64,000 nucleotides of DNA from Zancudomyces culisetae HAW-14-8. Taxonomy: Eukaryota > Fungi > Kickxellomycota. A program made the translations under genes and the position numbers. Where the stretch lies: contig JBNJNM010000011.1 in assembly GCA_052426225.1 (NCBI GenBank), positions 496,001 to 560,000 of the forward strand, in the 5' to 3' direction. The notes below the pieces were generated by a model. The model was given only the letters and a program-made list of their open reading frames with translations. It was not told the origin of the DNA and searched no databases. Shown here in pieces: positions 23,301-43,251 of the stretch (position 1 is its first letter; each line of letters begins with the position of its first letter).

Positions 23301-25651
23301 ATTTATACTCATTAATTATCCCTTCAGTATCGCATTCCTTATTTCTACTAAACGCTAAGAAAGTTTAGTAGATTATAACATTTTGCAGTGAAAGCGCGAT
23401 TGATTTTAACATGGGTATCAACTGGTAGCCGTGATTGATTAGCAATTTTTTGTTTGATCAAAAATAAAAATGTGTACAAGGCTTACAATAAACTTGCACA
23501 GGAAAACATTGCCTGTGGTGTTTGTGGTGACACGTTTATCCATCGCGTAATTTTTTAATTGCTAAATCCCAATAGTACTGCTTTTTTCTGTAGAACTGAC
23601 TAATGATTTGAGGGTAAAAATGCTGTACCTGTGTACAAAAAAAAACTTTGAGTTAAGCTATAGAGCCCAGGATGAACATTTTTTGGTCAGCTCTAAAAAA
23701 GCCTTAGCAAAAATAGTGTTTTCAACATGATATTATTTTTTGGGGGGAGGGAAGGAATAGTTGCTTTTGGTGATTACGATAATTATTTACATCTGATAAT
23801 ATCATAATCAAAAACCAATATTATGTAATACGTGTTCAGTGATATAAAAGCACTATAAGGCGTAGCCAAGAAAATACACCACTGCTCACATGTGCCATAT
23901 TTGATAAAAAATGATGTTTTATCTATTATGATGGATAATTTTTTGTCAATGAGCACAAGGTTATTGTACAATAACTTGAAACAACAATATTACATAACTC
24001 TGACTTTGTAAACTGATGTTTGTTGAGCGATTGGTGATGAAAGCTTTGAAAAACTAGCGATTCTGAAACATTAATACCACATCATAGCCGCTATCGTATA
24101 TGCCGTTTTAACAACCCAAGTTAACGAAATGATGCTTAGGAAACAGACAGAACTGTATAAACTAATGTTGGGATAACATAGCGAGCCTATCGAGCAGATT
24201 TTTTCGGCATTTTTTTTATGTAAAAGTCTAGTTTGTAGACTCTTGATAACATAAGACAAGTTCCTAGTCCACTTTGGATTTTGACCATATTCAAACAAAA
24301 AAGTGAATAAACCAGGTTGAACCAGAGTCGACAATAAGCATCGTTTAGCAACCAGGCTTTGTTGACTAGAAATATGGTTGGGAATCTCATAACCTACCAT
24401 CAATTAAAGAAAAGCTATTTCCGACGCACTTTTCCTCTCAAGTAAGTGCCCCAAATTCGAAAAGCGTTGTGCGAGATTTTTACTTTGTTACTTGATCTCA
24501 ACAATTTTTACCTAATTGATCTCGCGCTTATTTTAGTCGAAGTATGTCTTTATCTTAACAATCTATTAATAAAATAATCTAAAATGTTGATGTTTTTGTT
24601 AAGGGGTTAATGTTTTTGCTGTTGAGTATGGGATGTGGAACCTTCCACTAAGAGCACAACGTTTCCAAACTAACACAAAAGCAAGCAAATCATATTAGAA
24701 CCCTAAAGGTGTATATTTGTTGCGCACGTCATTGCTCTCCAATTGATGTGATGAAGTATTAAGCATTAATCTTGCACCCAATTTATAATCAGTCCTGCTA
24801 TCGGCAATTTAGTTCATTCATCTTCATTTCACTCATTATTGTTAGCCCAAAACTACAGTTTTAGCATTGATTATTAACACCAAGCCTGGGATATGCTGTA
24901 CACAACAATTGTAATTTCTAAAAAAACAGCCAATCGACACGGTGATGCCAAAGTATTTAAGTATTTCATTGGTTTGGTTACATTTCCTTAGAAGGCAAAG
25001 TCCCAAAAAAATAGCCCTGGACGGTTGGATTAGTAAGCAATAATAATTGGATTAAACGCATGCCTTACGTTTCTGAAGCAGAATAGGGTTCGCTACGAAG
25101 CACCATATGCCCTTTTTAGAATTGTTACCCATTTACTACCAGCTTCAGCATGATAGATTTGGATTTGCTAAAAAAAACTCAACTGTTATTCTAAATGAAT
25201 AACGTAATTGCGGAACATTTTGCTCTTCACTACAAAAAAAAGCCCGTTACTGAACTATCTGACCGATAAAGCATCATACATAATGAAATATGTTGTATGT
25301 GTTGTTTACTTTTTTATGGCTCTATAGAACAGCGTTAGAAAATTTAGGTGTGATTTAAGCAACTTTTTTAAAACTTTTTTAGAGGGGGTAAAAAAAGTTA
25401 TTGTTTTTAGTATGGGTTTAGAATTTGTACCTGGCAACTGTTAACATTTCTTAATAGCACAAAAACAGATGGTTGATCTCAAAAACTAATGCTATGACTT
25501 TTAAATAAAACTATAAATAGTGTGCCGGCGTTTCTGTTGCTAACTTTAGAGAACTTCAAAGATATTTGAAAACATAAAAAAAACGCAGACTTAACTGTAA
25601 TCCAAATCCAAACATAATTCTAAACCTAAACCTAGACTTAGTTTCAAAAAA

Positions 25652-26755
25652 ATGCTCTTTAAAAACAGCTCTCTGGTAGGACTTCTTGCATTGAGTCTAT
25701 CCTTCGGTGGTGTTCCAGCTGATGCCAAGTGCAAGAGTTTGCCAACTCCAGCAAGACTTCTCGAGCAGCTATACCAGGATGCATTGGCTGAAGGTGGTGA
25801 TTTTATCGTATACCAAGGAGGTAATGGTAGATCACAAGGAAATGGGGCTATGACATTATTCAACACTAGATTCCCAGGTATGAATCTCACCGTCATTGTA
25901 AACATGAGTGGAGTACACGCTGAGGCCATAGATGCGCAATTGGCAGAAGGGAAGCCAATCCCAAGTGTAATTGCACTTCAAACCATAAATGACTATGCCA
26001 GATGGAAGAGCCAGGGTAATCTCGTCGAGTACAAGCCCCCTCTTTGGGAAAAGGTATACGGTGATGTCAAAGACCCAGAGGGATATTTTACTGGGTTGTC
26101 AGGATTTACCTTTGCTCCTGTAGCATCCAGAGCGGCGTTTGATTCCGGGGATGCCCCGATCGAAGCACAGGACTTTTTGGATCCAAAATATAAGAACAGA
26201 ATTGCCTTGACTTATCCCCAAGATGATGATGCTATTCTTTTGACATTTTATAAATATGTCATGGACTATGGTTGGGACTATATCAACCGTCTTACTATGC
26301 AGAACGTTACTTGGGTTAGAGGTGCTGCCGCTACAACTGCAGTGATTTCAAACGGAACCGTACCAAATGGAGTTACTTTTACCGGCAATACCCCATTGGT
26401 TACACAGACAAACGCACGTATGGTGACAAGGATCCCAGAAAAATCGTGGTTTACCTTGGGTATACAATATGGTGCTATCCCAAAGAACGCGCCCCGTCCA
26501 GCTGCAGCAAAACTGTATCTCGCATGGAGACTGACTGAAGATGTTCAAAGAAGCAACTTAGTAGGGTGGCCAACACGATCTGACATTTCGCCCAAGGTCG
26601 GCCAAAAAGGTATGTTTGAATACAGTAACACATCTCCAACCATCTACAACGAATTTTTGTTGAACAGAACACTTGTCGAATCATTCAGATCAGAGATTGA
26701 AAGCATTATAGGCCCTGTTAGAGGCGATACCCCACTTAACAACCCTAACCTATAG
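25652..26755 (+). CDS. Secreted ABC-type solute-binding protein (Fe3+/thiamine/polyamine-type periplasmic binding fold)
   Basis: Signal peptide; LYQDALAEGG..VYQGG, IDAQLAEG, LQTINDYARWK..YKP, KDPEGYF, DFLDPKYKNRIALTYPQDDDAIL, APRPAAAKLYLAW are typical of this SBP family; TATAAATA at about 25512. Confidence 0.85.
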   Translation: MLFKNSSLVGLLALSLSFGGVPADAKCKSLPTPARLLEQLYQDALAEGGDFIVYQGGNGRSQGNGAMTLFNTRFPGMNLTVIVNMSGVHAEAIDAQLAEGKPIPSVIALQTINDYARWKSQGNLVEYKPPLWEKVYGDVKDPEGYFTGLSGFTFAPVASRAAFDSGDAPIEAQDFLDPKYKNRIALTYPQDDDAILLTFYKYVMDYGWDYINRLTMQNVTWVRGAAATTAVISNGTVPNGVTFTGNTPLVTQTNARMVTRIPEKSWFTLGIQYGAIPKNAPRPAAAKLYLAWRLTEDVQRSNLVGWPTRSDISPKVGQKGMFEYSNTSPTIYNEFLLNRTLVESFRSEIESIIGPVRGDTPLNNPNL

Positions 26756-27243
26756 TCATTTCGAGTTGAATATGACCACCTTTTACAGCATTTGTTTTTA
26801 CTAGTTTTTTTCTTTTCGCAACTTTTAATCTAATTTAAGAACAAGTGTATGTTATAATAAATAAACCATGATACGATATTGTGAGCAGATCTGAAGCATT
26901 GGGAACTAGGCCGTACAATATTTATATAATTAGTTGTCTAAACTCATTCCCATAGCGACTGCCTAGGCCATCACCTGCGTATTAGAGTTTTAATTACATT
27001 TGACCACAGTAAAACCATTGGTATCCTGCTAAAGAGACGCAAACCTCGCAAACATAAGGGCGCAGGTCATAGTCACGCTGATTTAATTGCTAACAGGTAA
27101 CACCCCTGGTTCAACAGAGGAAAATGCACAAGTATCTAGCCAATACTGATATTAGGTCATTTACATAAACAACACGAATAAATATTATTTGAATTATCAT
27201 TTGAACTATAATACTGCATAAATGAATAAATGGAAATTTAGCT

Positions 27244-28138
27244 CTAAAAAATAGCAGTAGACAGGTAAAACCCAAAACCAAAAAAAGCAATAGCTGCCCC
27301 AATAGAATATGACAAGATGTCTTGAGCAGCTATATTTTCGATAGTTTCTTTTTCTGGGTTAGTTAACGACATTAGTTTTCTGCTTACGCCCTCGCTTTCT
27401 TGTAATTTGTGCAATCCAAAGGAGCAGTTTTGAATCCAGAAAAATTTATTAAAAGCAACTAAAGTCTCTCTTTTAGTCTTAGGATCCCATATATCGGTTG
27501 AAGCATGAAACAGTATATCAAGCACAGTATTAGAAATAAAACCGATTGTGGCATTCGTGTGTATATAGTCAACGTTATTCGATGATCTCTTTTGAACCGT
27601 ATTTACGTGGATCTCACCGACCCAGTCCAAGTATTTCATAAATCCCATGTCCCATTTTGAACTCACTATTCGTCGGAGATATTTTGATAGCATAGTTTTT
27701 CTAAACTTGATTATAGGGTCGTCGAGCTTAAGCGTGTTTATATCCCGGACAACCTGTCCTTTGAACCCTTCCATAAAATGGGTGAAATTTTCCTATAAAT
27801 AGATATTGACCCACCAATCTGAATTGAAATTCTCATGATTTTTCAGGTTGTTTTACTTACCTTTGTTATATCAAAAGTAAAAATCCTATAATACACGGCA
27901 TCGGTCAAAACCGTAAGAAAAGGCATTAATAGCTCGCTTGAATTCATGAGTAGTTTATGTTCAGATTCATGATACTCGATAAAACTACATAGGTACTCAA
28001 ATCGGTATTTAAGATCAGTTTTGAGCCTATTTTAACATTTTTACCAAAATTAGTAAAAGCTTAAAGTAAACCAGCCTATTAATATAATTAGCTTTACCTA
28101 TTTTCATCAATAAATTGGACACCTAATTGTTTTGACAT
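27244..28138 (-). CDS. Protoglobin-like globin with C-terminal hydrophobic anchor (3 exons: 28098-28138, 27861-28026, 27244-27792)
   Basis: Spliced protein ..DLKYRFEYLCSFI..LTDAVYYRIFTFDITKENF..IKFRKTMLSKYL..YLDWVGEIH..VDYIHTNATIGF..AFNKFFWIQN matches the fungal protoglobin family; canonical splice sites. Confidence 0.85.
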
Positions 28139-29283
28139 GTTTCAATGAGTTTCACACCACAACAATGGTATATAAAATAAAGTCTAGTCTAAATGCGTTG
28201 AATGTAGAAAAACTGGTGATGGTGATAACAGAAAAAGTTCAAAGGGAATATACACCAAGCTAACCTGTTTGATAAGAAATGGTCAACATTTTATTCTGGG
28301 TAATCATGAAAATACTGGATGTACTTCGATTGGCTGAAAGCTTTTCACATATAAATCAGAGTAAAAAAGTGGTACCATCATTTCAAAAAGGTTATTCAGG
28401 TTTATTGAAAAGAAATGTGATATAGCTGGTTGTATTAAACTGAAGATAGTTTCTGTTTTTACATAAAGTTGTAAAAAAAATACATATCGAATACAATAAA
28501 AGCTATAGGATTATCAGTAAAAAAGTGCAGTATTTTTTTTTGTAGTGGATAAATAGTGTTTAAAGTGAGCGAGCCAATATCATGGGTTTGGAAAGTAATA
28601 AACCCGCGAACCAGCGAGTGAAAACTATATCCATAGCATAAAACAAACCTCACACATTTTGCGTACATAGGATGGTAAAATTGAGCGAATTCAGACTGAA
28701 AAACAAAAATATATAAATGATGAACAAAAGTTGAACACAGAAAAGTTTTAATAGTGAGACGCAAACAAATACGTGAGTATACTCGAATGTGGTTGAGGGA
28801 AAGTGTAGAGAAATTGTTTATAAATGAAATTTAATGCGCTTTACACAGTAAATAAGTACCACTTCTGCTCTACTAAAAAACCCTTTTTTTAAATAAATAT
28901 AATACAACAGAAACAAAAAACAAAAACAAAGAAAAAACAAAAAACAAAATACAATAATGATGGGTACATCATATTCTGATATATATGGCCATATACCTTG
29001 GCAAACTGATACAAAAGTATACCTTGCTACATCTTCATCTTCACCTCCTCACCTCCTCACCTCCTCACCCCTTCACCCCACTCTCATTAACTCTTCCTCT
29101 TTGCATTTTTCTTGTGTCTAATAGCTATGTATATTCTTTTTTTTTCGACTGACCTAGTTCAGCCAGACTCTAACACAAACATAAACACAAGTATAACCAA
29201 CACAAACTAGTTCTCCCTAGTTCAGCTTACATTAAGTTGATTTGGTGGTATTGAAGATAACATCCTGACAACTGACTTAATAA

Positions 29284-29400
29284 CTTTTCTATGCTTTTCT
29301 ATGCTTTTCTATGCTTTTTTACACTCTCTTGAACTCTCCTATACTATTCTACACCATTCTACACTCTCCTATACTCTCCTATACTCTCCTATACTATCTC
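29284..29400. repeat. 10-mer tandem repeats (TTTTCTATGC)x3 and (CTCTCCTATA)n inside the IR arm; mirror at about 38466-38582
   Basis: Directly visible. Confidence 0.85.
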
Positions 29401-30342
29401 ACTCAACCCTTGTTTGTACAATCAACGAATCACTTAACTACTCATTTATACCAACTTTTATATATCTTAACCAGGCTCATATCTATCCTTCTCTAATATT
29501 CAAACATTCCACTCCACTTACAAAAATAATGATAAAAGGGCAATTCAGAAACAAAAAATGTAAAACCTAAAAAAAATATTCAAAACCAGTTCTCCCAATT
29601 GAGTGGTGAAATAAACTCGAATGACGTTTGAGTGTTGGATTAATTTACAATCAACAACTATATGGTTTTGTTTTCACACAGTTTCTGTTATATACAGCTC
29701 TTCATGTTAGTAGTTTTGCGTCTTGCTTGAACAGTTTGTTTAACGTCAATAATAGGTTAATATTTTATCATACAGTTATAAAAAACATTACAGCATAAAA
29801 TGAGGAAAATGGTGTAGAACAAAAGTAAAAAAGTTAACACAAAAAGGACACAAAAAGGACACAAAAAATGGTGGAGATTGATATGAGTTAGTAAAAGCAG
29901 AAACAACTCCATATGTTCATGTAATAGGCTTGGTATTTAATGGATCTTATTGACGAGATAATAATAAAAACCTCTATTTTTATTTTAAAAAAATAGAAGA
30001 GTGGAAAAACTAAAACATGTGCAAGAATAAATATACTTCACCTTTAAAACAAGTAAATATAGTAATATCACTACAGTAATAAAAACATATCGATATCTTC
30101 ATGCAAATTTTAAACTCAACATACAAAAAAATAGTTAGTAATAGTGAGATATATCGAAACCTATAATTACATAGTGTATAACAAAGAAAGATTGTGTAAC
30201 TGTGTGTGTATATATGAAAACCAAAGTATAGCAGCCGATATATGTTAGATACTAGATATTAACTATTAGATAGCACATATCATGTACAGAAAGGGTGTAA
30301 GGTGTACCAATGTTAACGAGAAGATAATGTAATGGTAATATA

Positions 30343-30592
30343 TAACAGTAATAGCAGAATAGCAATAGCAACAGCAATAGCAGAATAACAATAGCAATAG
30401 CAATAGCAATAGCAGAATAACAATAGCAACAGCAATAGCAATAGCAGAATAACAACATCAACAGTAATAGCAGAATAACAATAGCAACAGCAATAGCAGA
30501 ATAGCAACATCAACAGCAATAACAGATTGACAACAGCAACAGCAATAGCAGAATAACAACATCAACAGCAATAACAGATTGACAACAGCAAT
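30343..30592. repeat. Compound AATAGC/AACAGC/AGAAT microsatellite just upstream of the START-like gene; mirror at about 37274-37523
   Basis: Directly visible; ends about 65 bp before the ATG at 30657. Confidence 0.9.
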
Positions 30593-30656
30593 CATAATCA
30601 TACTCAGAAAACGCTGATACTAACCTTCACAGTCTATCTACCCTCAACACTAAAAA

Positions 30657-31502
30657 ATGACTATAAAGCCATTAAGCTACAAAGATATTCCTAGCACAAA
30701 TAGTGTAGAATTTGAAAGTTTTATCAAGGAATGGGAAAGCAAGTGCAATGATCTGATGTTTTTTTCTTCAAAATGGCCAGTAGTAAAGCGAGAAAATGCT
30801 ATTTCAGTAAGAAAGAAATCACTTTCACCAGGAGATACAAAACAATGGTATTGTCGAGAAGTGAAAAGTAGTAATGTCAAATATGAAACATTAAGAAAGT
30901 TGTTGTTTTTGGATCAAGCCAAAAGTCAGAGGCTTTACAATACAAACATCATTGAAATTAAATGTATTGAAGGAATACTGTTAGGCGTGGCCGAAATAGT
31001 GCATACCAAATACAGAAAAAGATGGGGAGGAAAAAAGAGGGATTTTTGTTCGATAAATATTAAGAATGAAGTTACAGATCCACAGATTGCACAGTCACGG
31101 AGAGTATATACACCTGGTAGCGGATTGTCTGGAGTTCAGGCACTTGCAGAAGCAGCAGGAATACTTCCACGGCCATCAAAAAACGACGCAGTTTCTGCAA
31201 TATATCATGCGCTCCGTACCTCAGCTAATAACAAAGTTGTACGAAAGTTTCAGATTATTAGCATCCCAATTAATCATGGTAACTGTCAAAAGGTACCAGG
31301 TAGCATCAGAGCATATATTGAAAGTTATGAAGAAGTACGAGAACTAGCAAATGGAGAGATAGAATGGATCAGTGTACAGAGTTTTGAGCCTGGGGGATGG
31401 GTTTTGCGATCTGTCGCAGAGAAGAAATACTTTTCCGAGCTATTTTTGGATGCAGAGCAAATTTTTCAACTGGCAATGGAGAATATGATTATAGAAATTT
31501 AA
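30657..31502 (+). CDS. START/SRPBCC-like lipid-binding protein (DUF3074-like), copy 1
   Basis: WYCRE, KRDFCSI, FQIISIPINH, RAYIESYEEVREL..EIEWISVQSFEPGGWV resemble the fungal DUF3074/START pattern. Confidence 0.7.
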   Translation: MTIKPLSYKDIPSTNSVEFESFIKEWESKCNDLMFFSSKWPVVKRENAISVRKKSLSPGDTKQWYCREVKSSNVKYETLRKLLFLDQAKSQRLYNTNIIEIKCIEGILLGVAEIVHTKYRKRWGGKKRDFCSINIKNEVTDPQIAQSRRVYTPGSGLSGVQALAEAAGILPRPSKNDAVSAIYHALRTSANNKVVRKFQIISIPINHGNCQKVPGSIRAYIESYEEVRELANGEIEWISVQSFEPGGWVLRSVAEKKYFSELFLDAEQIFQLAMENMIIEI

Positions 31503-31868
31503 CGCAGGTGTAAGGTCGAATGAATGGGTGGAAAAGAAAGAAAAAAAGAAGATATAATATATGTGTGTATTTGTATAAAAGCTACAGGAAAGTAAACAGG
31601 AGTTTTATATTGGGGCGTGAGCTGTATAATGTATATAGTTTTTTTTTTAGAGAATTAGTGTTTAGTGAGATTTGAAAAATCCAAGAGTAATAAAGATATT
31701 TTATGAAAACCGTCATATATACTGAGTGTACTGGTATCTCCATACCATGTCAGTCATTTTATGTTTTAACAAAATGTGTTTACTCTTCTCTCAGTTTGTA
31801 ACAATACATTTATTGTGATTTTAGTGCGCTTTTCACATAAAAAGAATATTTTCACTTTGACAATAACC

Positions 31869-31899
<31 letters not shown>

Positions 31900-33397
31900 T
31901 CCGCAGCCTATACCTTTATTGCTGGCATTTATGTGATGGGTAGTATTTTATTCTCTTGCAACCACATTTATATACCATACTATTGGTACTGGCTTTTTAA
32001 GCGCCTTTTGTCTTTGCATTTTGAATGAGTATTTTTTCATAGCACATACCTAATAGGTTTTGTGTAATACCATCTTTATCACCTGTCACTTGAATATTTC
32101 ATGTTACTGTTATATTATTTCATCTCTACAGAAACCACTAAAAAAACCAAATCAGTATTTTCAACAATTAACTTGCAAATATTGCTTTTTCTTAGGACTC
32201 GTATAACAATTACCTTCACATAAACATTGTTGCGCTTTGCTCGGCTAAAACCTATAGTAAGTAGTTTGAAAAATTGTTCCTGTATGTTTCTTTATGCTTC
32301 CTAAAACATACTTCACTAAAAACTAAAACTGTGGTTCTCAGGTAAACTATACCAAAAAATCACAATCTTTGATTTATTTTGGACATGAGCATAGAGGTTA
32401 CAAAAATAACTCAATTCCGCATCTACTTTCCTAAATTTTAACTGTTTGAGCATTTTAGTATGAGGTTGGTAGCCGGAAGGTGGAAGGCTGTATCTATTCA
32501 GACTTCCCCACTAAAAAAAAAGCCGCCCTATAAAACTCTCTGCTATTTTCATGCAACCGCGTCCACACAACATGATATTAATCTTTTGGTTTGAGGTGGT
32601 GGCTATAACTGTAAAGGCTTGCATGAACGTGGTAAAAAATATAGCCACAACAGCTCCAGCCTACATGAAAACAAGAAGTCGCTCCACCATTTTATCCCTT
32701 TCTATTATTTTTAATTCTAAATGCTTTGAAGTGGTCCTATTCTTATTGTATTACCACAATAAAATATGAAATGTATTCTAACAAAATAACGAAAGCCAGC
32801 GCATTGTTTATTTACTAGTGAACGCCATATTTAGCTTTTCTGTGAGATTCTACAAGTTTAAATAATGTTTTGGGCAGAACAGGGCGTAACTTAGTGATAA
32901 CTCTACATCACTGTCATGAAAAACCTTTAGTATAACCACTTTCTGATCACCAATCTAAACCTTATAGCTAACTCTATTATTAAAGTACATGTTGTTGCAA
33001 CATCTTCGTATTGTGTAAAAAGAGGCTGATATTTTTTTTACATCTTTCCTTGAATATCCAGACTAAAAGAAAAAATGTATAATGCTACAATAGATATCTA
33101 CCGTTCTTGGAATATATATATAAACCCTACTTCTCTCTTCTGAAAAAAATATATTTTTAGGATAGGTTTAGAAGCATAGAAAAAATACAAAGCGAGTACA
33201 CTTGAAATAAACACTTGAATTCAACTTATATTCATATACTTTCATATTTTCATACATTCATTTTTCAATTACTCATCTTTCATACATTCATACTTACATA
33301 CTCGCATACTCGCACTTTTTTCTCATTTACACTCATAAGAGTTATTGCAATATTCATCCACTCAGGTAAACTTCTTAAAGGGCTAAAATAAAACAAA

Positions 33398-34807
33398 ATG
33401 AAGATTAATCTGCTCTCGACATTAGTTCTGTATTTACCAAATATTTCCCTGATTTGCGGACAGATACAAAAATATCCTCTTGAAAGACGTCAAGCTCAAG
33501 GTATGCCACTATCACCATGTATTCAATCCATTGTCGAAATATTAAATCCTTTATTGTCAGACAAAGGGCGTACAAGATCCATAACAGTGAAAGCAAAATC
33601 GCGCTCAAAAACGGTTTTGTACAATCTATTTGCATCAAGGCGTGAGGATACTGGTGCTTCGGGGCCAGGTATCGATCTTAGCATAAAAATAAGTACAATT
33701 GTCAATGACCCTTCAGTACAAACACCGTTGAAAGATATCGAAAAATATGAGCAGCTTGCCAATGCAAATAGCGGCGCTAATAAAAACGAAAAAACACAAG
33801 ACAGAGCTGGAGTAGGCCTGGGGGGCATAGGGAGCAATACTCCTGCACAGGAAGATATCACCAACATGTCAGGTTCAACCGATATACCTGTGCAATCTAC
33901 AGGGTTACCAACTACAAAAATTGACGAGGATGCAGCACCTGCTCTCTCGAGTATCCCATCGTCGCCATTTGGCGATGCTCTTTCGTCACCATTTGGAGAT
34001 TTTACTGGAGGGGCTCCCGTGGGAACGAAATCCACAGGAAAAACTTGCACTTTTCCCTGGTCAGCGTCAAACAATGACAACATACAGGTCATATCACCGA
34101 GCGGAATGAATGCAGGTTGGGCAATGTCGCCCGATCAAAGCTGTCAGCGGGGTTCGTGGTGTCCATATGCATGCAAACCAGGCTATTATTCAGCCCAGTG
34201 GGATCCAGAAGCCAAAGACCCAATTGGTCCAGGAAATATGCATGGAGGCTTATATTGTGACAAAGACGGCCAGCTAAAGAAACCATACTCAAACAAGCCG
34301 TTTTGTGTCTTGGGTATGGGAAATGTTGTTATCTACAACTCTCTAAAAAAATCAGTATCTGCATGTCAAACTACATACCCTGGGAATGAGGCAATGATAA
34401 TCCCCACAGTTGCAAAACCAGGTCAAAGTATCGGGCTTAACATTGTTCCAAATACCTACTGGCTAGGGACGAGCTCTCAGTTTTACGTTAACTTGGAGGG
34501 AAGCGATGAAAAACAATGCATATGGGGAAATGAAGATAAGCCGGTCGGGAACTGGGGTCCTTATATTTTTGGAGGCGGGCAAGCAAAGGATGGAAACACA
34601 TACATTAGTGTTACCTACAATCCTCTATATATCGAATCAGGATTTAATACAAAAGACGCCTACAATGTTCAAATCAAATGCACCAAGGGCAAATGCAATT
34701 TTCCATCGTCAAAAGTTTGTAAATGCGAAAATGGTGCATGTTCAATGCCGAATGGCTGTACTGTTACACTTATGCCGGGTGCCATGGCACAGTTTTACCT
34801 GTACTAG
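33398..34807 (+). CDS. Secreted SUN-family beta-glucanase/beta-glucosidase (Adg3-like)
   Basis: Signal peptide, low-complexity linker, NAGWAMSPDQSC..WCPYACKPGYYSAQWDP..GGLYC..CQTTYPGNEAMIIPT..QFYVN..CIWG..GNWGPY SUN domain. Confidence 0.93.
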   Translation: MKINLLSTLVLYLPNISLICGQIQKYPLERRQAQGMPLSPCIQSIVEILNPLLSDKGRTRSITVKAKSRSKTVLYNLFASRREDTGASGPGIDLSIKISTIVNDPSVQTPLKDIEKYEQLANANSGANKNEKTQDRAGVGLGGIGSNTPAQEDITNMSGSTDIPVQSTGLPTTKIDEDAAPALSSIPSSPFGDALSSPFGDFTGGAPVGTKSTGKTCTFPWSASNNDNIQVISPSGMNAGWAMSPDQSCQRGSWCPYACKPGYYSAQWDPEAKDPIGPGNMHGGLYCDKDGQLKKPYSNKPFCVLGMGNVVIYNSLKKSVSACQTTYPGNEAMIIPTVAKPGQSIGLNIVPNTYWLGTSSQFYVNLEGSDEKQCIWGNEDKPVGNWGPYIFGGGQAKDGNTYISVTYNPLYIESGFNTKDAYNVQIKCTKGKCNFPSSKVCKCENGACSMPNGCTVTLMPGAMAQFYLY

Positions 34808-35205
34808 TAAACTTAAACTGCTGTTTTTTTTTGCTTTTATTAATATGTTATATTGCAAAACATTAAAATATGTCTATGCTTACAATTTAAACTATATATC
34901 TAACTAAAGGAGTAGAAACAAGACTTTTCAGTTATTTAAAAAATACTGGTGATTTTTTTTGCAAAAAACAACCGCCAATAGTAGCGTGGTTTATTATCAA
35001 TTTTCACTTTAAAATTTTTTTTAATTTGAACTTCAGAAATGAAAATAGCTATTCTTGAAACCAAATTAATGCAAACAAAAGTAAATATAACACAAAGCAA
35101 AAAAGGATTAAATAAATTTTACAAAAAGATTTGGGCCCAGTCGCATTTCTGTCACAATCCAGCTTAAAATTTATGAATATCTAATAATTCACTGATAAGT
35201 ACGAA

Positions 35206-35974
35206 ATGAATACTCAGGCTTTGAAGAGGGCCACATTAGTAAATGGTGGTTTTAGAAGAGCACTCTTCGGAGAGCTCAACAGCAGAGGTACGAAGTTTTG
35301 TTAGAATTTTCATTTACATAAAAATTTTACGCCTACCAATTTACACAAAATTAATCGTTATACTATGGTGTTTAGCAAGCCTTTTTAGAAGCTACTCTAG
35401 CGTTGTGGACCCAAAAAAAGGCAACAAAAACGAAAAGACTGGTTTTCAGATTCCATACCAATCCGTCCTTGAGCGAGAAACCACAGAAAAATTTCTAGAT
35501 TTTAGTGCTAAGCAACTTTTACTCACAGAAATTCTTAGAGGAGGATGGATTGTTTTGGAAGCATTTTTCCGCGAGCCATTTACAATGATGTATCCTTGGG
35601 AAAAGGGTCCACTAAGTACCAGATTTAGAGGTGAACATGCCTTGCGTAGATATCCTTCCGGCGAAGAACGCTGTATCAGTTGCAAGCTCTGCGAAGCAAT
35701 CTGTCCTGCGCAAGCGATTACAATAGAATCTGAACCTAGATCAGACGGCTCACGTAAAACTATTAGATACGATATTGACATGACCAAATGCATTTTCTGT
35801 GGACTTTGTCAGGAAGCATGTCCGACAGATGCTATAGTTGAAGGACCAAACTTTGAATACTCAACCGAATCACACGAAGAGTTGATCTACAACAAAGAAA
35901 AGCTACTGGAAAACGGCGATAAATGGGAGATTGAGCTTTCTAGAAACATCCGAACTGAAAATCGGTATCGCTAA
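35206..35974 (+). CDS. NDUFS8: NADH:ubiquinone oxidoreductase Fe-S subunit 8 (TYKY), 2 exons: 35206-35287, 35376-35974
   Basis: [39 protein letters not shown] and [12 protein letters not shown], two 4Fe-4S motifs; the presequence exon [10 protein letters not shown] splices in frame. Confidence 0.97.
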
Positions 35975-36128
35975 TTTGATCCTATACACAATCACTTTTT
36001 ATAATATACGCGTTTTCTCTGGTTTTTACCTACATAGTTACAAGATTTTTTAAAAATGCTAATAAACATGTTTTATTGCAGAGCTAAAATTCTATTCTTG
36101 GATGCGCGAAAGTCTCTCCTATAAACAA

Positions 36129-39005
36129 ATACCAGTACACTCAGTATATATGACGGTTTTCATAAAATATCTTTATTACTCTTGGATTTTTCAAATCTCA
36201 CTAAACACTAATTCTCTAAAAAAAAAACTATATACATTATACAGCTCACGCCCCAATATAAAACTCCTGTTTACTTTCCTGTAGCTTTTATACAAATACA
36301 CACATATATTATATCTTCTTTTTTTCTTTCTTTTCCACCCATTCATTCGACCTTACACCTGCGTTAAATTTCTATAATCATATTCTCCATTGCCAGTTGA
36401 AAAATTTGCTCTGCATCCAAAAATAGCTCGGAAAAGTATTTCTTCTCTGCGACAGATCGCAAAACCCATCCCCCAGGCTCAAAACTCTGTACACTGATCC
36501 ATTCTATCTCTCCATTTGCTAGTTCTCGTACTTCTTCATAACTTTCAATATATGCTCTGATGCTACCTGGTACCTTTTGACAGTTACCATGATTAATTGG
36601 GATGCTAATAATCTGAAACTTTCGTACAACTTTGTTATTAGCTGAGGTACGGAGCGCATGATATATTGCAGAAACTGCGTCGTTTTTTGATGGCCGTGGA
36701 AGTATTCCTGCTGCTTCTGCAAGTGCCTGAACTCCAGACAATCCGCTACCAGGTGTATATACTCTCCGTGACTGTGCAATCTGTGGATCTGTAACTTCAT
36801 TCTTAATATTTATCGAACAAAAATCCCTCTTTTTTCCTCCCCATCTTTTTCTGTATTTGGTATGCACTATTTCGGCCACGCCTAACAGTATTCCTTCAAT
36901 ACATTTAATTTCAATGATGTTTGTATTGTAAAGCCTCTGACTTTTGGCTTGATCCAAAAACAACAACTTTCTTAATGTTTCATATTTGACATTACTACTT
37001 TTCACTTCTCGACAATACCATTGTTTTGTATCTCCTGGTGAAAGTGATTTCTTTCTTACTGAAATAGCATTTTCTCGCTTTACTACTGGCCATTTTGAAG
37101 AAAAAAACATCAGATCATTGCACTTGCTTTCCCATTCCTTGATAAAACTTTCAAATTCTACACTATTTGTGCTAGGAATATCTTTGTAGCTTAATGGCTT
37201 TATAGTCATTTTTTAGTGTTGAGGGTAGATAGACTGTGAAGGTTAGTATCAGCGTTTTCTGAGTATGATTATGATTGCTGTTGTCAATCTGTTATTGCTG
37301 TTGATGTTGTTATTCTGCTATTGCTGTTGCTGTTGTCAATCTGTTATTGCTGTTGATGTTGCTATTCTGCTATTGCTGTTGCTATTGTTATTCTGCTATT
37401 ACTGTTGATGTTGTTATTCTGCTATTGCTATTGCTGTTGCTATTGTTATTCTGCTATTGCTATTGCTATTGCTATTGTTATTCTGCTATTGCTGTTGCTA
37501 TTGCTATTCTGCTATTACTGTTATATATTACCATTACATTATCTTCTCGTTAACATTGGTACACCTTACACCCTTTCTGTACATGATATGTGCTATCTAA
37601 TAGTTAATATCTAGTATCTAACATATATCGGCTGCTATACTTTGGTTTTCATATATACACACACAGTTACACAATCTTTCTTTGTTATACACTATGTAAT
37701 TATAGGTTTCGATATATCTCACTATTACTAACTATTTTTTTGTATGTTGAGTTTAAAATTTGCATGAAGATATCGATATGTTTTTATTACTGTAGTGATA
37801 TTACTATATTTACTTGTTTTAAAGGTGAAGTATATTTATTCTTGCACATGTTTTAGTTTTTCCACTCTTCTATTTTTTTAAAATAAAAATAGAGGTTTTT
37901 ATTATTATCTCGTCAATAAGATCCATTAAATACCAAGCCTATTACATGAACATATGGAGTTGTTTCTGCTTTTACTAACTCATATCAATCTCCACCATTT
38001 TTTGTGTCCTTTTTGTGTCCTTTTTGTGTTAACTTTTTTACTTTTGTTCTACACCATTTTCCTCATTTTATGCTGTAATGTTTTTTATAACTGTATGATA
38101 AAATATTAACCTATTATTGACGTTAAACAAACTGTTCAAGCAAGACGCAAAACTACTAACATGAAGAGCTGTATATAACAGAAACTGTGTGAAAACAAAA
38201 CCATATAGTTGTTGATTGTAAATTAATCCAACACTCAAACGTCATTCGAGTTTATTTCACCACTCAATTGGGAGAACTGGTTTTGAATATTTTTTTTAGG
38301 TTTTACATTTTTTGTTTCTGAATTGCCCTTTTATCATTATTTTTGTAAGTGGAGTGGAATGTTTGAATATTAGAGAAGGATAGATATGAGCCTGGTTAAG
38401 ATATATAAAAGTTGGTATAAATGAGTAGTTAAGTGATTCGTTGATTGTACAAACAAGGGTTGAGTGAGATAGTATAGGAGAGTATAGGAGAGTATAGGAG
38501 AGTGTAGAATGGTGTAGAATAGTATAGGAGAGTTCAAGAGAGTGTAAAAAAGCATAGAAAAGCATAGAAAAGCATAGAAAAGTTATTAAGTCAGTTGTCA
38601 GGATGTTATCTTCAATACCACCAAATCAACTTAATGTAAGCTGAACTAGGGAGAACTAGTTTGTGTTGGTTATACTTGTGTTTATGTTTGTGTTAGAGTC
38701 TGGCTGAACTAGGTCAGTCGAAAAAAAAAGAATATACATAACTATTAGACACAAGAAAAATGCAAAGAGGAGGAGTTAATGAGAGTGGGGTGAAGGGGTG
38801 AGGAGGTGAGGAGGTGAGGAGGTGAGGAGGTGAGGAGGTGAGGAGGTGAGGAGGTGAGGAGGTGAAGATGAAGATGTAGCAAGGTATACTTTTGTATCAG
38901 TTTGCCAAGGTATATGGCCATATATATCAGAATATGATGTACCCATCATTATTGTATTTTGTTTTTTGTTTTTTCTTTGTTTTTGTTTTTTGTTTCTGTT
39001 GTATT
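36129..39005 (-). repeat. Right arm (2877 bp) of large inverted repeat
   Basis: Reverse complement of 28901-31737; 40 bp longer because (AGGAGGTG) occurs 8 times (38801-38864) versus 3 times in the left arm. Confidence 0.97.
36364..37209 (-). CDS. START/SRPBCC-like (DUF3074-like) protein, copy 2
   Basis: Translation identical to 30657-31502. Confidence 0.7.
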   Translation of the reverse strand: MTIKPLSYKDIPSTNSVEFESFIKEWESKCNDLMFFSSKWPVVKRENAISVRKKSLSPGDTKQWYCREVKSSNVKYETLRKLLFLDQAKSQRLYNTNIIEIKCIEGILLGVAEIVHTKYRKRWGGKKRDFCSINIKNEVTDPQIAQSRRVYTPGSGLSGVQALAEAAGILPRPSKNDAVSAIYHALRTSANNKVVRKFQIISIPINHGNCQKVPGSIRAYIESYEEVRELANGEIEWISVQSFEPGGWVLRSVAEKKYFSELFLDAEQIFQLAMENMIIEI

Positions 39006-40315
39006 TTATGGCATTGGTGATTTTTGTTTAACTTTAACCCATTCTTTTTTCGTTACTATTACCCTTTATGACCATTAGCTCAAACTTTCTGTAAGTATGA
39101 CGCTCTTAGGGAAACGAAGAGGAATTAGTTGAATAGAGATATTGTGTAGATTACCTTTTAGTAGTTTTATATGGATTTTAGTTAATGAGTTTATCAAACA
39201 ATATTGTCAGATACTAACTCCAACGTTTTTTCGTGTCACAATTTCGAATGAATGTTTTGAATATTAGGTATACTTCAGTTATCTGAAATATTATGCATTC
39301 TAGCCTAATATTTATGATTAACGTAGTAGCTAAATAGTTTACAGATTCATTGATAACTGTAAATTTCCCAAGGATTAATATCTCCAAAAGTTCCAGACTT
39401 AGGTTGCTCACTTTTACTTACTTGACGCTTTGACTTATGCTTATGGCTATTAACACAGGTGGATTATAGTCACAACAGTATCAAGTATATATAATACTCA
39501 AAAATCATGTGATCCATACATACTGTACTTGCAAGTAATATCCTTAACCTGCAAATTTTATCTTGATAGACCATTGAGATGTTCAGCTCTATACACTAGC
39601 ATTTTCTAGCACTCTTTATATCACTTTGTTTAAATGAGTTTAGCCTTTTTCGAGCTTTATAGCATCTAAATATCTGCCATTCGCAATATTAGTGTATTTT
39701 TTTCTCTTTTCTCGCCATTACCAAATTAACTTTGTTAATAAAAACATCATATGTTCGTACATAGTTGTAAATGTACCCATGCAATAATTGGAGTAAAAAC
39801 ATTTAAAAGGAAATTTTTTTAATAGTAGCGTTGCTTAGCATAAAATTATTTTTTGCAATTACAGAAAAATTTGTTGTTAATTCTTAATTAGGTTATTTAA
39901 ACTCTTTTAAACCTGTGCTTAGAGAAAATACTAGGAAAAAACAATCTTGCTATAGATGCAACCTAAAATAATGCTGAATACTATGGTATGAAAAATTAAG
40001 ATACCGGTAATAAGGTACAGTCGATATCCGAGATAGAAGGTTTTCTGAGGGGGTTCGAATAGTAGTTATTGATAATAATGTCTTATACCCGAAATTAAGG
40101 TACAGGATGTTTGTGCTTTTATCAGTGCAGCATTTTATTTATGAAAATGTATCTACTTCCTATATAAACAGGTGAGTAAAGAACTTCTGTTGTTTAATTT
40201 TTGTAGGAGCAAAATCAAGAGTGCAAATAGTAAAACATAAATGAAAATTTTGGAAAGATTTTGGAAAAAAGACGAAAGGAATGATAAAAACAAGAAAAAG
40301 AAAAAGAGGGAATGA

Positions 40316-42121
40316 ATGCAAAATAAAAAGATAATGAGTAGACAACAAGGAATAGAGGATGTAGACATATATAAAAGAGATTACAGCATTGGAATTTCGG
40401 GAGAAACCAGTAGAGGAACCGCTGGATCTATGAAAAACAAGAAGCTGTTTGATTACGAACTTGGAAAAGTAAGATTGGTCTCTGATATTCTCAAAAACAG
40501 TAAGAAAAATAGATTTGGAACATCCATTCGAGAAAGTGATGTTAATAAAAGTGGAGTGAGGGCTGGGAAAGCAAATCAAAACAGTAAAAAACTAGAGAAT
40601 GTTGTAGAAAATCCAAAAAAAAAACCTGAAACACGTAAAGCTGTCTTGAAGAGGGAGGAAAGTAAGATCAGCGAAATAAAAAAAAGTAAACGTGTAGATG
40701 GTGGGTTGAATCTAGGTATATGTGATAATGGAACTATGCAAGAGAAAGAAGGGCCGAAAGTACGTGGTGGAGCGATGGGCACAGGGTATGAATTAGAAAT
40801 TAAGATGGTAGCATGTGAAAAAGGAGAAAGTCGGGGGCTATTGAGCAAGGCAAATCATTCAAAAGCCCGTGAAAGTGTATGTACAAGACAGGCAGGAAAG
40901 AATGAATTCAGAGGCGATGTCAATCGAGGACGCTATCTGAAAAGTGCAAACGCAGAGGAAAGGGAGAGCGTTCAAAAGGGAGCGCACGGGTATGGATGGG
41001 TGGGGAGAGGGGATAAAGGAATCTTTCCGGGGTTCATAACGGTGAGTGTACCGACAAGAGGTAGGGAGGGGGTATTGAAAAAGCTGGAGGAGATAATAGC
41101 GAGTAGCAACAAAGAGGCTGGGAAAACAGGACCAGTGATAGGGGGTTTAGGGCGAAGAAAAGTTGGGAAAACAACAATACTGTCAGCTCTTAGAAATAGG
41201 GGCACGTGTAATCCAAGCTATACAAAACAAGATAAAAAAGAGGGGGTAGGGGCGTTTGTTACACCTGGATTTGGGGTTCTGCTAGATTTTCCGGCGATTT
41301 GTGTAGAAAATGAATTTGTAGGAGAAAGCAGTGGAGGAGTACACCAGAGAGAAGTAGGTTTTGGGCAGAAAAGACAGGGGATGCTAGTTGAAACTAATGA
41401 GCAGAGAGCCCGTGATCTGCATCTTGTAGTGGCGGCGATTCACGTTTGCGACATAGTATTGCTGGTACTAAACATTGAAGAAACTGAGGTGGATAGAGGT
41501 ATGCTTACTATACTTAAAGAAGCCAGGGAAACGGCTCTGAATCTACAAAAGGATAAAGCGAAGGGTAGCTTTGGAACTAGCACAAAAGGCAGAGGTGAGA
41601 CGTCATTTGGGGGTAATGCGTTAAAAAAGGGTGTGGCTGATTTTATAGTTTTGTATAACAGAACGGATAAAAACCAGGACACACTCGCTAATCCAACCAA
41701 TGCCGGGGAGGTTGGAAGCTGGGTCGATTGCTATCCTGACCAAAAAGTGCAACGTCCGAGGATGGTGGCAGAACTACGAAACCTGGGGTTTAATGTTATC
41801 AACTATATTCATATACCCCGACCTTCCGATCTGGTGTCACCACAACTGTCAGTCGCCTCCAGTTTGGCGGAGTTTTGGGCAGATATACCACTAGATTCCA
41901 CAAAAGACACCACATCATCCATTCAGTCGACAAATGCGGGATATAACAACAGTGATGACAACGATAGCCATCGTTACAACACATCTGTGGCCAAGCCGTG
42001 GTGTTACTTTACCTCTAGATATCGCCAAAGAACGCTTTCAAAGCCCCCACATGTGAATAGCGGCTATCTTTTCAATGATACTATTGACTACTTGGCTCGG
42101 ATAACCTACTTTGCCACCTAG
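40316..42121 (+). CDS. SMG9-like P-loop NTPase (nonsense-mediated decay SMG1C subunit candidate)
   Basis: Long K/G-rich N-terminus, then VIGGLGRRKVGKTTILSAL (Walker A), VLLDFP and LHLVVAAIHVCDIVLLV..DRGMLTILKEA, which parallel SMG9 motifs as I recall them. Confidence 0.55.
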   Translation: MQNKKIMSRQQGIEDVDIYKRDYSIGISGETSRGTAGSMKNKKLFDYELGKVRLVSDILKNSKKNRFGTSIRESDVNKSGVRAGKANQNSKKLENVVENPKKKPETRKAVLKREESKISEIKKSKRVDGGLNLGICDNGTMQEKEGPKVRGGAMGTGYELEIKMVACEKGESRGLLSKANHSKARESVCTRQAGKNEFRGDVNRGRYLKSANAEERESVQKGAHGYGWVGRGDKGIFPGFITVSVPTRGREGVLKKLEEIIASSNKEAGKTGPVIGGLGRRKVGKTTILSALRNRGTCNPSYTKQDKKEGVGAFVTPGFGVLLDFPAICVENEFVGESSGGVHQREVGFGQKRQGMLVETNEQRARDLHLVVAAIHVCDIVLLVLNIEETEVDRGMLTILKEARETALNLQKDKAKGSFGTSTKGRGETSFGGNALKKGVADFIVLYNRTDKNQDTLANPTNAGEVGSWVDCYPDQKVQRPRMVAELRNLGFNVINYIHIPRPSDLVSPQLSVASSLAEFWADIPLDSTKDTTSSIQSTNAGYNNSDDNDSHRYNTSVAKPWCYFTSRYRQRTLSKPPHVNSGYLFNDTIDYLARITYFAT

Positions 42122-42435
42122 CTTTTGTATTAATCTTAGCTGACTTTTTTTTAAACTTTGAAATATGCTTGTTATAGCGATTTTTTTAGCTTCTTTTTGT
42201 GGAACTGAAATTATACCTAAAACTTTGGACATGTCTATTGAATATCACAAATACAAGCCAAATGAAGTTTAACACTGAAAGACAGCAACTAGACGCATAA
42301 TAGAATATGGGAGATGCTTGACGAGGTCAATGGGTAATGGTAAAACAAAAAAAACATATTGTTGCAAGAGTAACAATTTTGAACAAAAACAAGGTCAATC
42401 TTTTATTAACAGAAAAAAAACCAAAGTTATTAAAT

Positions 42436-43251
42436 TTAAGATACAAGGGTGGATGCAGTTGATGACTCGCTATAATAAAAAACAATTCACAGATGGTTAA
42501 ATTATATATGCATAAAAAAAGTAAAAAAAAAAGACAATTATTGAGCAATATATTGAAATATAAAACCCAAGATAATGTCCGTTATCCATTTCATGTATAT
42601 TACGCAAATACACACATATGGCTTATTTTTTCTTTCTTTTTTTAACTCCTTCATCACAAATGAAGTAAAGCATGGCGATATTGCAAACCACAACTCAACA
42701 CTTTTGTGACAAGTAAATAAAAAAATATGGCCAAATGCAGGCCGCAACGTTATAAACGTAATAAAAATACATATAGGAAATGTATCACAAGACAATAAAG
42801 CAACTAAGATATAGAATAGTGACACTTACTATCTCCAGGTTGGTGGCAATTGACCTGAGGTTCTGTAGTATCTGGCAAGTCTGTGGACACGGGATTCGAT
42901 CAAAATCAATCTGTATTTGGCATCGTGGTCCTTCTTGTTTCTTTCCAAGTGCTTGCGAACTGAGACTGCCTTCTTGATCAAGAAGTACAAGTCTTCTGGG
43001 ATCTCTGGAGCCAATCCACTTGATCTCAAGATTCTTACAATCTTGTTTCCGGTAACGAAACGAACAACTGGGATTCCGTGGCTGTCTCTCAAAACAACAC
43101 CGATTTGAGATGGGGTTACACCCTTCTTGGCCAACTTGCAGATGGTTTGGCAGACTTCGTCTGGTGTAGTCTTGACCCAAGCTGGTGGAGTGCGTCTGTA
43201 TGGGAGAGCTGATGAGCTCATTCCCTTTCCTGGTGTGTGCATGCGTCCCAT
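42436..43251 (-). CDS. RPS13: 40S ribosomal protein S13 (uS15), 2 exons: 42830-43251, 42436-42469
   Basis: [33 protein letters not shown]; the TA|GTAAGT...TATAG|C intron restores the C-terminus [11 protein letters not shown]. Confidence 0.97.

What the first reader, a model, noticed from the sequence alone, without database searches (positions are those of the whole stretch)
28901..39005. Candidate invertible (flip-flop) cassette: 2.8-kb gene-bearing inverted repeats enclosing a SUN glucanase and NDUFS8
Seen: two almost identical arms (28901-31737, 36129-39005) in opposite orientation. Each has an inward-pointing START/DUF3074-like gene, and they flank a 4391-bp unique core. No transposase, recombinase or target-site duplication is visible. 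Known: kb-scale gene-containing IRs mediate orientation switching at the MAT loci of Ogataea and Komagataella. Inference: homologous recombination between the arms would flip the core, giving two chromosomal isomers, and would keep the arms homogenised. This could be an undescribed switch acting on a cell-wall remodelling gene, or simply a very recent inverted duplication. Because the arms are identical, inversion would not change the core genes' immediate promoters, so any effect must be long-range or chromatin-based.
Basis: partly seen in the sequence, partly recalled or inferred. Interest (0 to 1): 0.85.

Follow-up and report, generated by a model that had tools for sequence, protein, structure and literature searches.

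The report
Old inverted gene duplication, kept identical
A gut fungus of mosquito larvae carries two mirror-image 2.8-kb copies of a lipid-binding-type gene around two housekeeping genes; the copies are older than the split between two strains and are kept alike by copying onto each other, which is a known kind of genome structure and shows no sign of being a genetic switch.

Summary
The arms are 28897-31737 and 36129-39009. They are 100% identical over the inner 2,700 nt and differ by 2-3 substitutions and a 40-nt microsatellite indel in the outer ~230 nt. They enclose a unique 4,391-nt core with a SUN-family gene and NDUFS8. Each arm carries an inward-pointing DUF3074 gene whose predicted fold is START-like.

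The genome is Zancudomyces culisetae (Harpellales), not a budding yeast. It is probably the HAW-14-8 PacBio HiFi assembly.

An independent Illumina assembly of strain COL-18-3, about 2% diverged, has the same four junctions. A four-way comparison of the arms gives 38 sites where both arms agree within a strain but differ between strains, and 1 site that follows position. The duplication therefore predates the strain split and evolves in concert by patchy arm-to-arm gene conversion. This refutes both "very recent duplication" and "assembly artefact".

Nothing supports a programmed switch. There is no recombinase, no alternative gene sets and no nearby silencing region, and inversion would leave an identical local structure.

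The scan's first readers flagged many similar inverted-repeat-bracketed segments elsewhere in this genome; I verified two. Verdict: a new member of a known kind, comparable to sex-chromosome palindromes and the long inverted repeats of Candida albicans.

The parts
28897..31737 (+). Left arm of the inverted repeat (2,841 nt): 1.76 kb of non-coding upstream DNA rich in tandem repeats, then the DUF3074 gene and 235 nt of 3' flank
36129..39009 (-). Right arm of the inverted repeat (2,881 nt), the reverse complement of the left arm
31738..36128 (.). Unique 4,391-nt core (spacer), single copy in the genome
30657..31502 (+). DUF3074 gene, left copy (281 aa). Predicted START-domain fold. One of only two copies in the genome
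   Evidence: Pfam; model pLDDT 85.6; Foldseek top hits are CERT/StAR START domains, E about 1e-11
36364..37209 (-). DUF3074 gene, right copy, identical to the left copy
33398..34807 (+). SUN-family (beta-glucosidase/cell-wall) gene, 469 aa; the N-terminus looks like a signal peptide by eye (no predictor was run)
   Evidence: Pfam PF03856, E 3e-62; translation
35243..35974 (+). NDUFS8 (complex I 23-kDa/TYKY subunit). The ORF shown probably reads through an intron at its 5' end; the conserved part starts near 35378
   Evidence: the COL-18-3 annotation gives 226 aa
38829..38868 (.). 40-nt extra (GGTGAGGA)5 microsatellite units, present only in the right arm. With 2-3 substitutions nearby, this is the only difference between the arms
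30344..30591 (+). 26-nt-period tandem array upstream of the arm gene (mirror copy at 37275-37522). The COL-18-3 short-read contig breaks here
30101..31640 (+). Central tract that is also identical between the two arms in strain COL-18-3: the gene, 556 nt upstream and 138 nt downstream. All 21 differences from this genome are shared by both COL arms

Best explanation
This is an old inverted segmental duplication, that is, a palindrome with a 4.4-kb spacer, in Zancudomyces culisetae. A 2.8-kb block holding a START-fold DUF3074 gene and its repeat-rich upstream region lies in mirror orientation on both sides of SUN and NDUFS8. [quoted passage not shown] The arms are kept nearly identical by recurrent, patchy intrachromosomal gene conversion, a form of non-allelic homologous recombination. 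In this genome the last conversions covered almost the whole arm. In strain COL-18-3 only the central 1.5 kb, the gene and its proximal flanks, is homogenised, and the outer 1.2 kb and innermost 100 nt have drifted apart. Shown here: the structure, its presence in a second strain, and the concerted site pattern. Inferred: that crossover resolution of the same recombination occasionally inverts the core, and that this is a neutral by-product because the cassette is mirror-symmetric and inversion changes no local gene neighbourhood. It is one of several such inverted-repeat-bracketed segments in this genome.
For: Structure. Second genome: contigs LSSK01000681.1 (L009) and LSSK01000634.1 (L036) of GCA_001969505.1, which is Z. 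culisetae COL-18-3 (PMC5954228). They are colinear with the window across all four junctions and overlap each other by 753 nt at 100% inside the right arm. Four-way site patterns over the whole arm: 38 concerted, 1 orthologous, 27 private to the COL left arm, 36 private to the COL right arm, 1 private to this genome's left arm. Over the inner 1,370 nt alone: 31 concerted, 0 orthologous. Between-strain substitution divergence in arm non-coding DNA is 2.1% by pairwise alignment and 3.3-4.1% in the four-way alignment. That is no lower than the 2.2% of single-copy flank, yet within-genome arm divergence is 0.1% here. COL arms differ by 4.5% in the outer 1.4 kb but by 0% in 30101-31640. In both strains the differences sit at the arm edges, as expected for conversion tracts that start internally. 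HiFi reads would span the cassette if this is the HAW-14-8 hifiasm assembly; the match is 27.2 Mb, 26 contigs and a largest contig of 5.2 Mb in PMC12611240 against 27.09 Mb, 25 contigs and C11 of 5,239,357 bp. Precedents: primate X palindromes show arm divergence lower within than between species, and spacer inversions in about 50% of species comparisons (PMC8327919). ORF-bearing inverted repeats of about 1.7-3.2 kb at over 99% identity with about 11-kb spacers are rearrangement breakpoints in C. albicans, and its inversions of 4-103 kb have breakpoints in long inverted repeats (PMC6591007). Other inverted repeats verified in this genome: C11:2976001 onward, at least 3.9 kb at 98.8%; C21:1007457/1026461, 503 nt at 98.8% with an 18.5-kb spacer.
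Against: No read-level evidence was available, so neither the orientation nor any mixture of orientations was checked directly. There is no outgroup with conserved synteny: in Smittium simulii, S. mucronatum and S. culicis, NDUFS8 lies next to a glutamate dehydrogenase gene, and the S. culicis DUF3074 homologue lies next to TMEM33. It therefore cannot be said which arm is the original, and the substitutions cannot be polarised. Many concerted sites lie in tandem-repeat DNA where alignment is less certain. Outside the 30318-30628 array, 24 concerted sites remain against 1 orthologous. The COL-18-3 contig crosses 1.5 kb of arm-identical sequence with short reads, so its orientation of the core is not independent evidence. 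The perfect identity of the HiFi arms could be slightly overstated by assembly consensus.
Confidence: 0.8

Rival explanations
1. A programmed or regulated flip-flop switch. Inversion of the core between the arms changes expression of SUN, NDUFS8 or flanking genes through position or chromatin effects, as at the MAT loci of Ogataea and Komagataella.
For: Kilobase-scale identical inverted repeats are the substrate of such switches (PMC6692504). The arms are maintained over evolutionary time. Orientation heterogeneity was not tested.
Against: There are no alternative gene sets at the two ends of the core. No recombinase or nuclease gene is present. Both flanks are ordinary gene-dense DNA: SBP-like and protoglobin genes on the left; RPS13, PIG-S and PRP3 on the right. 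The window shows no long AT-rich or repeat block. The locus lies about 0.52 Mb from the end of a 5.24-Mb contig. The cassette is mirror-symmetric, so each core gene keeps the same neighbours after inversion. Many other inverted-repeat-bracketed segments with unrelated gene content exist in the genome, which points to a general structural class rather than a dedicated switch.
Confidence: 0.04
2. A very recent, neutral inverted duplication whose arms are identical only because there has been no time to diverge.
For: 99.9% arm identity in this genome.
Against: The same duplication with the same junctions is present in COL-18-3, which differs by about 2.2% in flanking non-coding DNA. Arm non-coding DNA has diverged just as much between strains while staying identical within this genome. 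COL arms differ by 4.5% in their outer part.
Confidence: 0.02
3. An assembly artefact, that is, a false inverted duplication produced by the long-read assembler.
For: Perfect 2.7-kb identity. No reads were examined.
Against: An independent short-read assembly of another strain reproduces both inner and both outer junctions and resolves 63 substitution differences private to one arm or the other.
Confidence: 0.01
4. A mobile element with very long terminal inverted repeats (Foldback-like, with repeat-rich arms) that carries SUN and NDUFS8 as cargo.
For: The outer arms are mosaics of 6-26-nt tandem repeats, which is reminiscent of Foldback-element arms (from general knowledge).
Against: Only two arm copies exist in 27 Mb, both at this locus. 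There is no target-site duplication and no transposase. The cargo includes the single-copy complex I gene. The site is identical in both strains.
Confidence: 0.02
5. Identity of the arms is enforced mainly by purifying selection on two gene copies, not by conversion.
For: The protein is 100% conserved between strains, with one synonymous change in 846 nt. In COL-18-3 the homogenised tract is centred on the gene.
Against: Non-coding arm DNA, including fast-evolving microsatellite mosaics, is also identical within this genome while 2-4% diverged from the other strain, and the changes are shared by both arms. Selection on a protein cannot produce that pattern. Selection may still help to retain the palindrome, as proposed for X palindromes (PMC8327919).
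Confidence: 0.05

Closest known systems
Sex-chromosome palindromes of primates (Y P1-P8; 26 human X palindromes)
   Same: Inverted arms over 99% identical around a unique spacer. There are protein-coding genes in the arms. Arm divergence is lower within a genome than between genomes, which indicates arm-to-arm gene conversion. The structure is conserved across lineages. Spacer inversion is a frequent, mostly neutral outcome of recombination within one chromatid (PMC8327919; PMC8600007).
   Different: The arms here are 2.8 kb, against 8 kb to 1.45 Mb. The setting is an autosome-like contig of an early-diverging fungus. There is no link to sex chromosomes or germline expression. Only two strains could be compared.
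Long ORF-containing inverted repeats of Candida albicans (Todd et al. 2019)
   Same: A fungal genome with ORF-bearing inverted repeats of about 1.7-3.2 kb at over 99% identity, separated by about 11 kb. Long inverted repeats are breakpoints of inversions of 4-103 kb, and also of copy-number change and loss of heterozygosity (PMC6591007).
   Different: No rearrangement has been observed here. Concerted evolution across strains is shown here, not rearrangement.
Flip-flop mating-type switching (Ogataea polymorpha FF1, Komagataella phaffii FF2)
   Same: Recombination between kilobase-scale inverted repeats inverts the intervening segment (PMC6692504).
   Different: In those systems, MATa and MATalpha genes sit at opposite ends and one end abuts a centromere or telomere that silences it. 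Here the core holds SUN and NDUFS8, no silencing region is nearby, and the organism belongs to Zoopagomycota.
Plastid genome inverted repeats and the yeast 2-micron plasmid
   Same: Identical inverted repeats produce two isomers by recombination (from general knowledge).
   Different: Those are organellar or plasmid molecules, and the 2-micron plasmid uses a dedicated FLP recombinase. This is a chromosomal locus with no recombinase.

Membership tests
Palindrome / long inverted repeat with arm-to-arm gene conversion | Two inverted arms of very high identity around a unique spacer | tested here: met
   2,700 nt at 100% plus 181 nt at 98%; 4,391-nt spacer; spacer single copy
Palindrome / long inverted repeat with arm-to-arm gene conversion | Orthologous structure present in a diverged genome | tested here: met
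   COL-18-3 contigs reproduce all four junctions
Palindrome / long inverted repeat with arm-to-arm gene conversion | [quoted passage not shown] | tested here: met
   0.1% within this genome against 2.1-4.1% between strains; 38 concerted sites against 1 orthologous
Palindrome / long inverted repeat with arm-to-arm gene conversion | Spacer found in both orientations among individuals or lineages | not testable with these tools
The only second assembly crosses 1.5 kb of identical arm with short reads
Flip-flop mating-type-style switch (FF1/FF2) | Inverted repeats flank the invertible segment | tested here: met
Flip-flop mating-type-style switch (FF1/FF2) | Two alternative gene sets at opposite ends of the segment, only one of them expressed | tested here: not met
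   The core encodes one SUN gene and one NDUFS8 gene, which are unrelated. No other ORF of 90 aa or more carries a domain
Flip-flop mating-type-style switch (FF1/FF2) | A silencing region (centromere or telomere) next to one side | tested here: not met
   About 0.52 Mb from the contig end. Flanks are gene-dense and the window has no long AT-rich or repeat block. Chromatin itself was not tested
Flip-flop mating-type-style switch (FF1/FF2) | Both orientations observed, with a change of phenotype | not testable with these tools
Site-specific-recombinase invertible element (FLP/2-micron, bacterial invertons) | A recombinase gene in or beside the element | tested here: not met
   No recombinase domain in any ORF of the cassette or its immediate flanks
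Long-TIR / Foldback transposon | Target-site duplication, several copies, transposase | tested here: not met
   No target-site duplication; two arm copies only; no transposase
START-domain (Bet v 1-like) lipid-binding proteins, for the arm gene product | Helix-grip fold matching solved START domains | tested here: met
   AlphaFold2 model, pLDDT 85.6, pTM 0.83. Foldseek: CERT, STARD3 and StAR START domains, E 1e-11 to 1e-9, target TM 0.7-0.8. Pfam DUF3074. Ligand binding was not tested

The most novel reading that the evidence does not exclude
The core really does exist in both orientations at appreciable frequency within cultures of Z. culisetae. On this reading the locus is one of dozens of gene-bearing inverted repeats that make the coenocytic thallus a mixture of structural isomers. 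That would be a genome-wide palindrome system with active concerted evolution in an early-diverging fungus, possibly retained because it protects or doses the arm genes.
Probability: 0.15. Interest if true: 0.55.

Novelty: new member of a known kind. Interest (0 to 1): 0.3.

Why it matters
The locus gives a clean, sequence-level example of concerted evolution of a gene-bearing inverted repeat in Zoopagomycota, a phylum in which I found no report on genome structure of this kind. The conversion tracts are visible as a whole-arm tract in one strain and a 1.5-kb central tract in the other. Together with the other inverted-repeat-bracketed segments in the same genome, it suggests that palindrome-type architecture may be common in this mosquito-gut symbiont. 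This matters practically for assembly, because short-read contigs break inside the arms. It also matters for interpreting 'duplicated BUSCO' content and for predicting sites of inversion, isochromosome formation or copy-number change. It does not provide evidence for a new regulatory switch.

Tried and rejected
The one 200-kb block obtained (C21:1.0-1.2 Mb) turned out to be rich in LTR retrotransposons and is not representative.
3. Outgroup synteny to decide which arm is ancestral. The only DUF3074 homologue found by word search is in S. culicis (38% identity). It is single copy, next to TMEM33, with no inverted repeat. NDUFS8 in three Smittium species lies beside GDH, with no SUN or DUF3074 nearby. 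No polarisation is possible.
4. Exact-protein look-ups of SUN and of the 601-aa right-flank ORF found nothing. The homologue search with the 601-aa ORF returned nothing. RPS13 worked instead.
5. Junction mechanics. I looked for microhomology or a template-switch signature at 31737|31738, 36128|36129 and the outer junctions. There is only a modest imperfect hairpin at the left inner junction (z -2.3, 6 of 200 shuffles as good), and no convincing mechanism follows from it.
6. Degenerate extension of the repeat beyond its boundaries: none.
7. RNA genes in the arms: none.
8. One literature search was mis-specified and gave nothing useful.
Full report
OBSERVATION. The inverted repeat is real. The repeat finder gives arms 29038-31737 and 36129-38828: 2,700 nt, 100% complementary, 4,391 nt apart. 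An outer 181-nt segment at 98% (28897-29077 / 38829-39009) is out of register because the right arm has five extra GGTGAGGA units, 40 nt in all (alignment). The inner boundary is sharp. No weaker homology continues past either boundary. The arms are therefore 28897-31737 (2,841 nt) and 36129-39009 (2,881 nt). The arm and its gene occur exactly twice in the 27.09-Mb genome, both at this locus, and the core is single copy.

GENE CONTENT.
- Each arm carries one ORF of 281 aa, pointing inward (30657-31502 +, 36364-37209 -). It matches Pfam DUF3074.
- An AlphaFold2 model built on 16 homologues (pLDDT 85.6) matches solved START domains (CERT, STARD3, StAR; Foldseek E about 1e-11, target TM 0.7-0.8).
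- The remaining 1.76 kb of each arm is non-coding and is a mosaic of 6-26-nt tandem repeats.
- The core holds a SUN-family gene (33398-34807, E 3e-62) and NDUFS8 (35243-35974).
- The region has no recombinase, transposase, tRNA or Rfam family, and the outer junctions have no target-site duplication.

ORGANISM.
- An exact-protein look-up of the arm protein returned contig LSSK01000681.1 of GCA_001969505.1. PMC5954228 lists LSSK00000000 as Zancudomyces culisetae, 28.7 Mb, 35.5% GC.
- The window is about 97.7% identical to that contig, so it comes from another strain of the same species or a very close relative.
- The match to the PacBio HiFi assembly of strain HAW-14-8 is close. This genome has 27.09 Mb in 25 contigs, with C11 at 5,239,357 bp. 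The published assembly has 27.18 Mb in 26 contigs, of which two are mitochondrial, and a largest contig above 5.2 Mb (PMC12611240). This identification is an inference.
- The analogy with budding-yeast MAT loci is therefore phylogenetically remote: this is a harpellid (Zoopagomycota) gut symbiont of mosquito larvae.

THE SECOND STRAIN.
- Contig L009 runs colinearly from the left flank through the whole left arm and the core into the inner 1,370 nt of the right arm. It ends in the 26-nt tandem array.
- Contig L036, found through the RPS13 gene of the right flank, runs from the right flank across the outer junction into 2.19 kb of the right arm. It overlaps L009 by 753 nt at 100%.
- COL-18-3 therefore has the same four junctions. 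This rules out an assembly artefact and a post-divergence duplication.

CONCERTED EVOLUTION.
- I aligned the four arms (this genome left and right, COL left and right). Over the whole arm there are 38 sites where both arms agree within each strain but differ between strains, against 1 site that follows position. A further 27 sites are private to the COL left arm, 36 to the COL right arm and 1 to this genome's left arm.
- Excluding the 30318-30628 tandem array still leaves 24 concerted sites against 1.
- Between-strain substitution divergence of non-coding DNA is 2.2% in the left flank, 2.1% in the arm and 1.2% in the core. Coding regions differ by 0.1-0.9%.
- The arms thus diverge between strains at the ordinary neutral rate, yet they differ by only about 0.1% within this genome. 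This is the signature of arm-to-arm gene conversion.
- The tracts are visible. In COL-18-3 the arms are identical from 30101 to 31640 (the gene, 556 nt upstream and 138 nt downstream). They differ by 4.5% in the outer 1.4 kb and at several sites in the innermost 100 nt.
- In this genome almost the whole arm has been homogenised, and the only differences lie in the outer 230 nt. There the COL left arm matches this genome's left arm at all three differing positions. Edge-clustered differences are what internally initiated conversion tracts predict.
- COL arms differ by more than the between-strain distance. This suggests that the arms were already partly diverged at the split, so the duplication is older still. 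This last step is inference and cannot be polarised without an outgroup.

NO OUTGROUP. The closest available relatives do not share the neighbourhood. The only homologue found by word search is in Smittium culicis (38% identity). It is single copy, beside TMEM33, with no inverted repeat. In S. simulii, S. mucronatum and S. culicis, NDUFS8 lies beside a glutamate dehydrogenase gene, with no SUN or DUF3074 nearby. Which arm is the original cannot be decided.

IS IT A SWITCH?
- The defining features of flip-flop mating-type switches are alternative gene sets at the two ends of the invertible segment and a silencing centromere or telomere on one side (PMC6692504). Neither is present.
- The core has two unrelated genes. 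The flanks are gene-dense: SBP-like and protoglobin genes on the left; a 601-aa ORF, RPS13, PIG-S, PRP3 and PRCC on the right.
- The window has no long AT-rich or repeat block, and the locus lies about 0.52 Mb from the contig end.
- The cassette is mirror-symmetric. After inversion SUN would again lie downstream of a DUF3074 copy, and NDUFS8 would again be convergent with one.
- The most economical reading is that inversion, if it occurs, is a neutral by-product of the same recombination that homogenises the arms. This matches primate X palindromes, where spacers are inverted in about half of species comparisons (PMC8327919), and ORF-bearing inverted repeats of C. albicans, where inversions of 4-103 kb have been validated (PMC6591007).
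- The core has the same orientation in both assemblies. The COL contig had to cross 1.5 kb of arm-identical sequence with short reads, so this is weak evidence.

GENOME CONTEXT. First-stage notes on this genome list many 'candidate invertible segments' (108 notes fit the words 'invertible segment'). These are leads only. I verified two:
- C11:2976001 onward has arms of at least 3.9 kb at 98.8% identity about 16 kb apart.
- C21:1007457-1007959 / 1026461-1026962 is a 503-nt inverted repeat at 98.8% with an 18.5-kb spacer.
The existence of several unrelated inverted-repeat-bracketed segments argues for a general structural class, not a dedicated switch on a cell-wall gene.

No read-level test of orientation, depth or junction support was made. 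Public HiFi, CLR and Nanopore reads of HAW-14-8 exist (PRJNA1254182) and would settle the question.

VERDICT. Both 'very recent duplication' and 'artefact' are refuted. 'Undescribed switch' is unsupported and unlikely. This is a new member of a known kind, a palindrome or long inverted repeat with arm-to-arm gene conversion, in a lineage where I found no earlier report of one.

Noticed in passing
window 31723-31756: An imperfect hairpin is centred exactly on the left inner junction: the last ~15 nt of the arm pair with core nt 31742-31756 around a CTCC loop. DNA fold is -6.1 kcal/mol, z -2.3, with 6 of 200 shuffles as good. It could be a trace of how the duplication boundary was set, or chance. 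The right inner junction has no counterpart.
   Followed up: partly
window 25652-26755 and 27244-27774: The left flank carries a bacterial-type solute-binding protein gene (SBP_bac_6/8/1) and a protoglobin-domain ORF. Both are conserved in COL-18-3 at 0.9% and 0.6% divergence. They are possible horizontal acquisitions in a gut symbiont.
   Followed up: no
window 40316-42121: This 601-aa ORF in the right flank has no Pfam domain. The exact look-up and the word-based homologue search also found nothing.
   Followed up: partly
L020-L032 (G000:C21:1075000-1192000): A dense cluster of paired ~370-450-nt direct repeats about 5 kb apart at 99-100% identity looks like nested, recent LTR retrotransposons in both orientations. 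It may be a centromere-like or transposon-island region.
   Followed up: no
L011/L012 (G000:C11:2976001-2979925 and 2996001-2999956): A second gene-scale inverted repeat on the same contig: at least 3.9 kb at 98.8% identity, about 16 kb apart.
   Followed up: partly
L013/L015 (G000:C21:1007457-1007959 and 1026461-1026962): A 503-nt inverted repeat at 98.8% identity brackets 18.5 kb.
   Followed up: no
L035:1290-1562 (Smittium culicis LSSM01000936.1): A partial second copy of NDUFS8 coding sequence lies about 1 kb upstream of the full gene (tblastx, 61% over 91 aa).
   Followed up: no
window 20642-28896 versus 39010-53260: Divergence from COL-18-3 is about twice as high in the left flank (97.8% identity) as in the right flank (98.9%). 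Core non-coding DNA is also less diverged (1.2%) than the left flank (2.2%).
   Followed up: no
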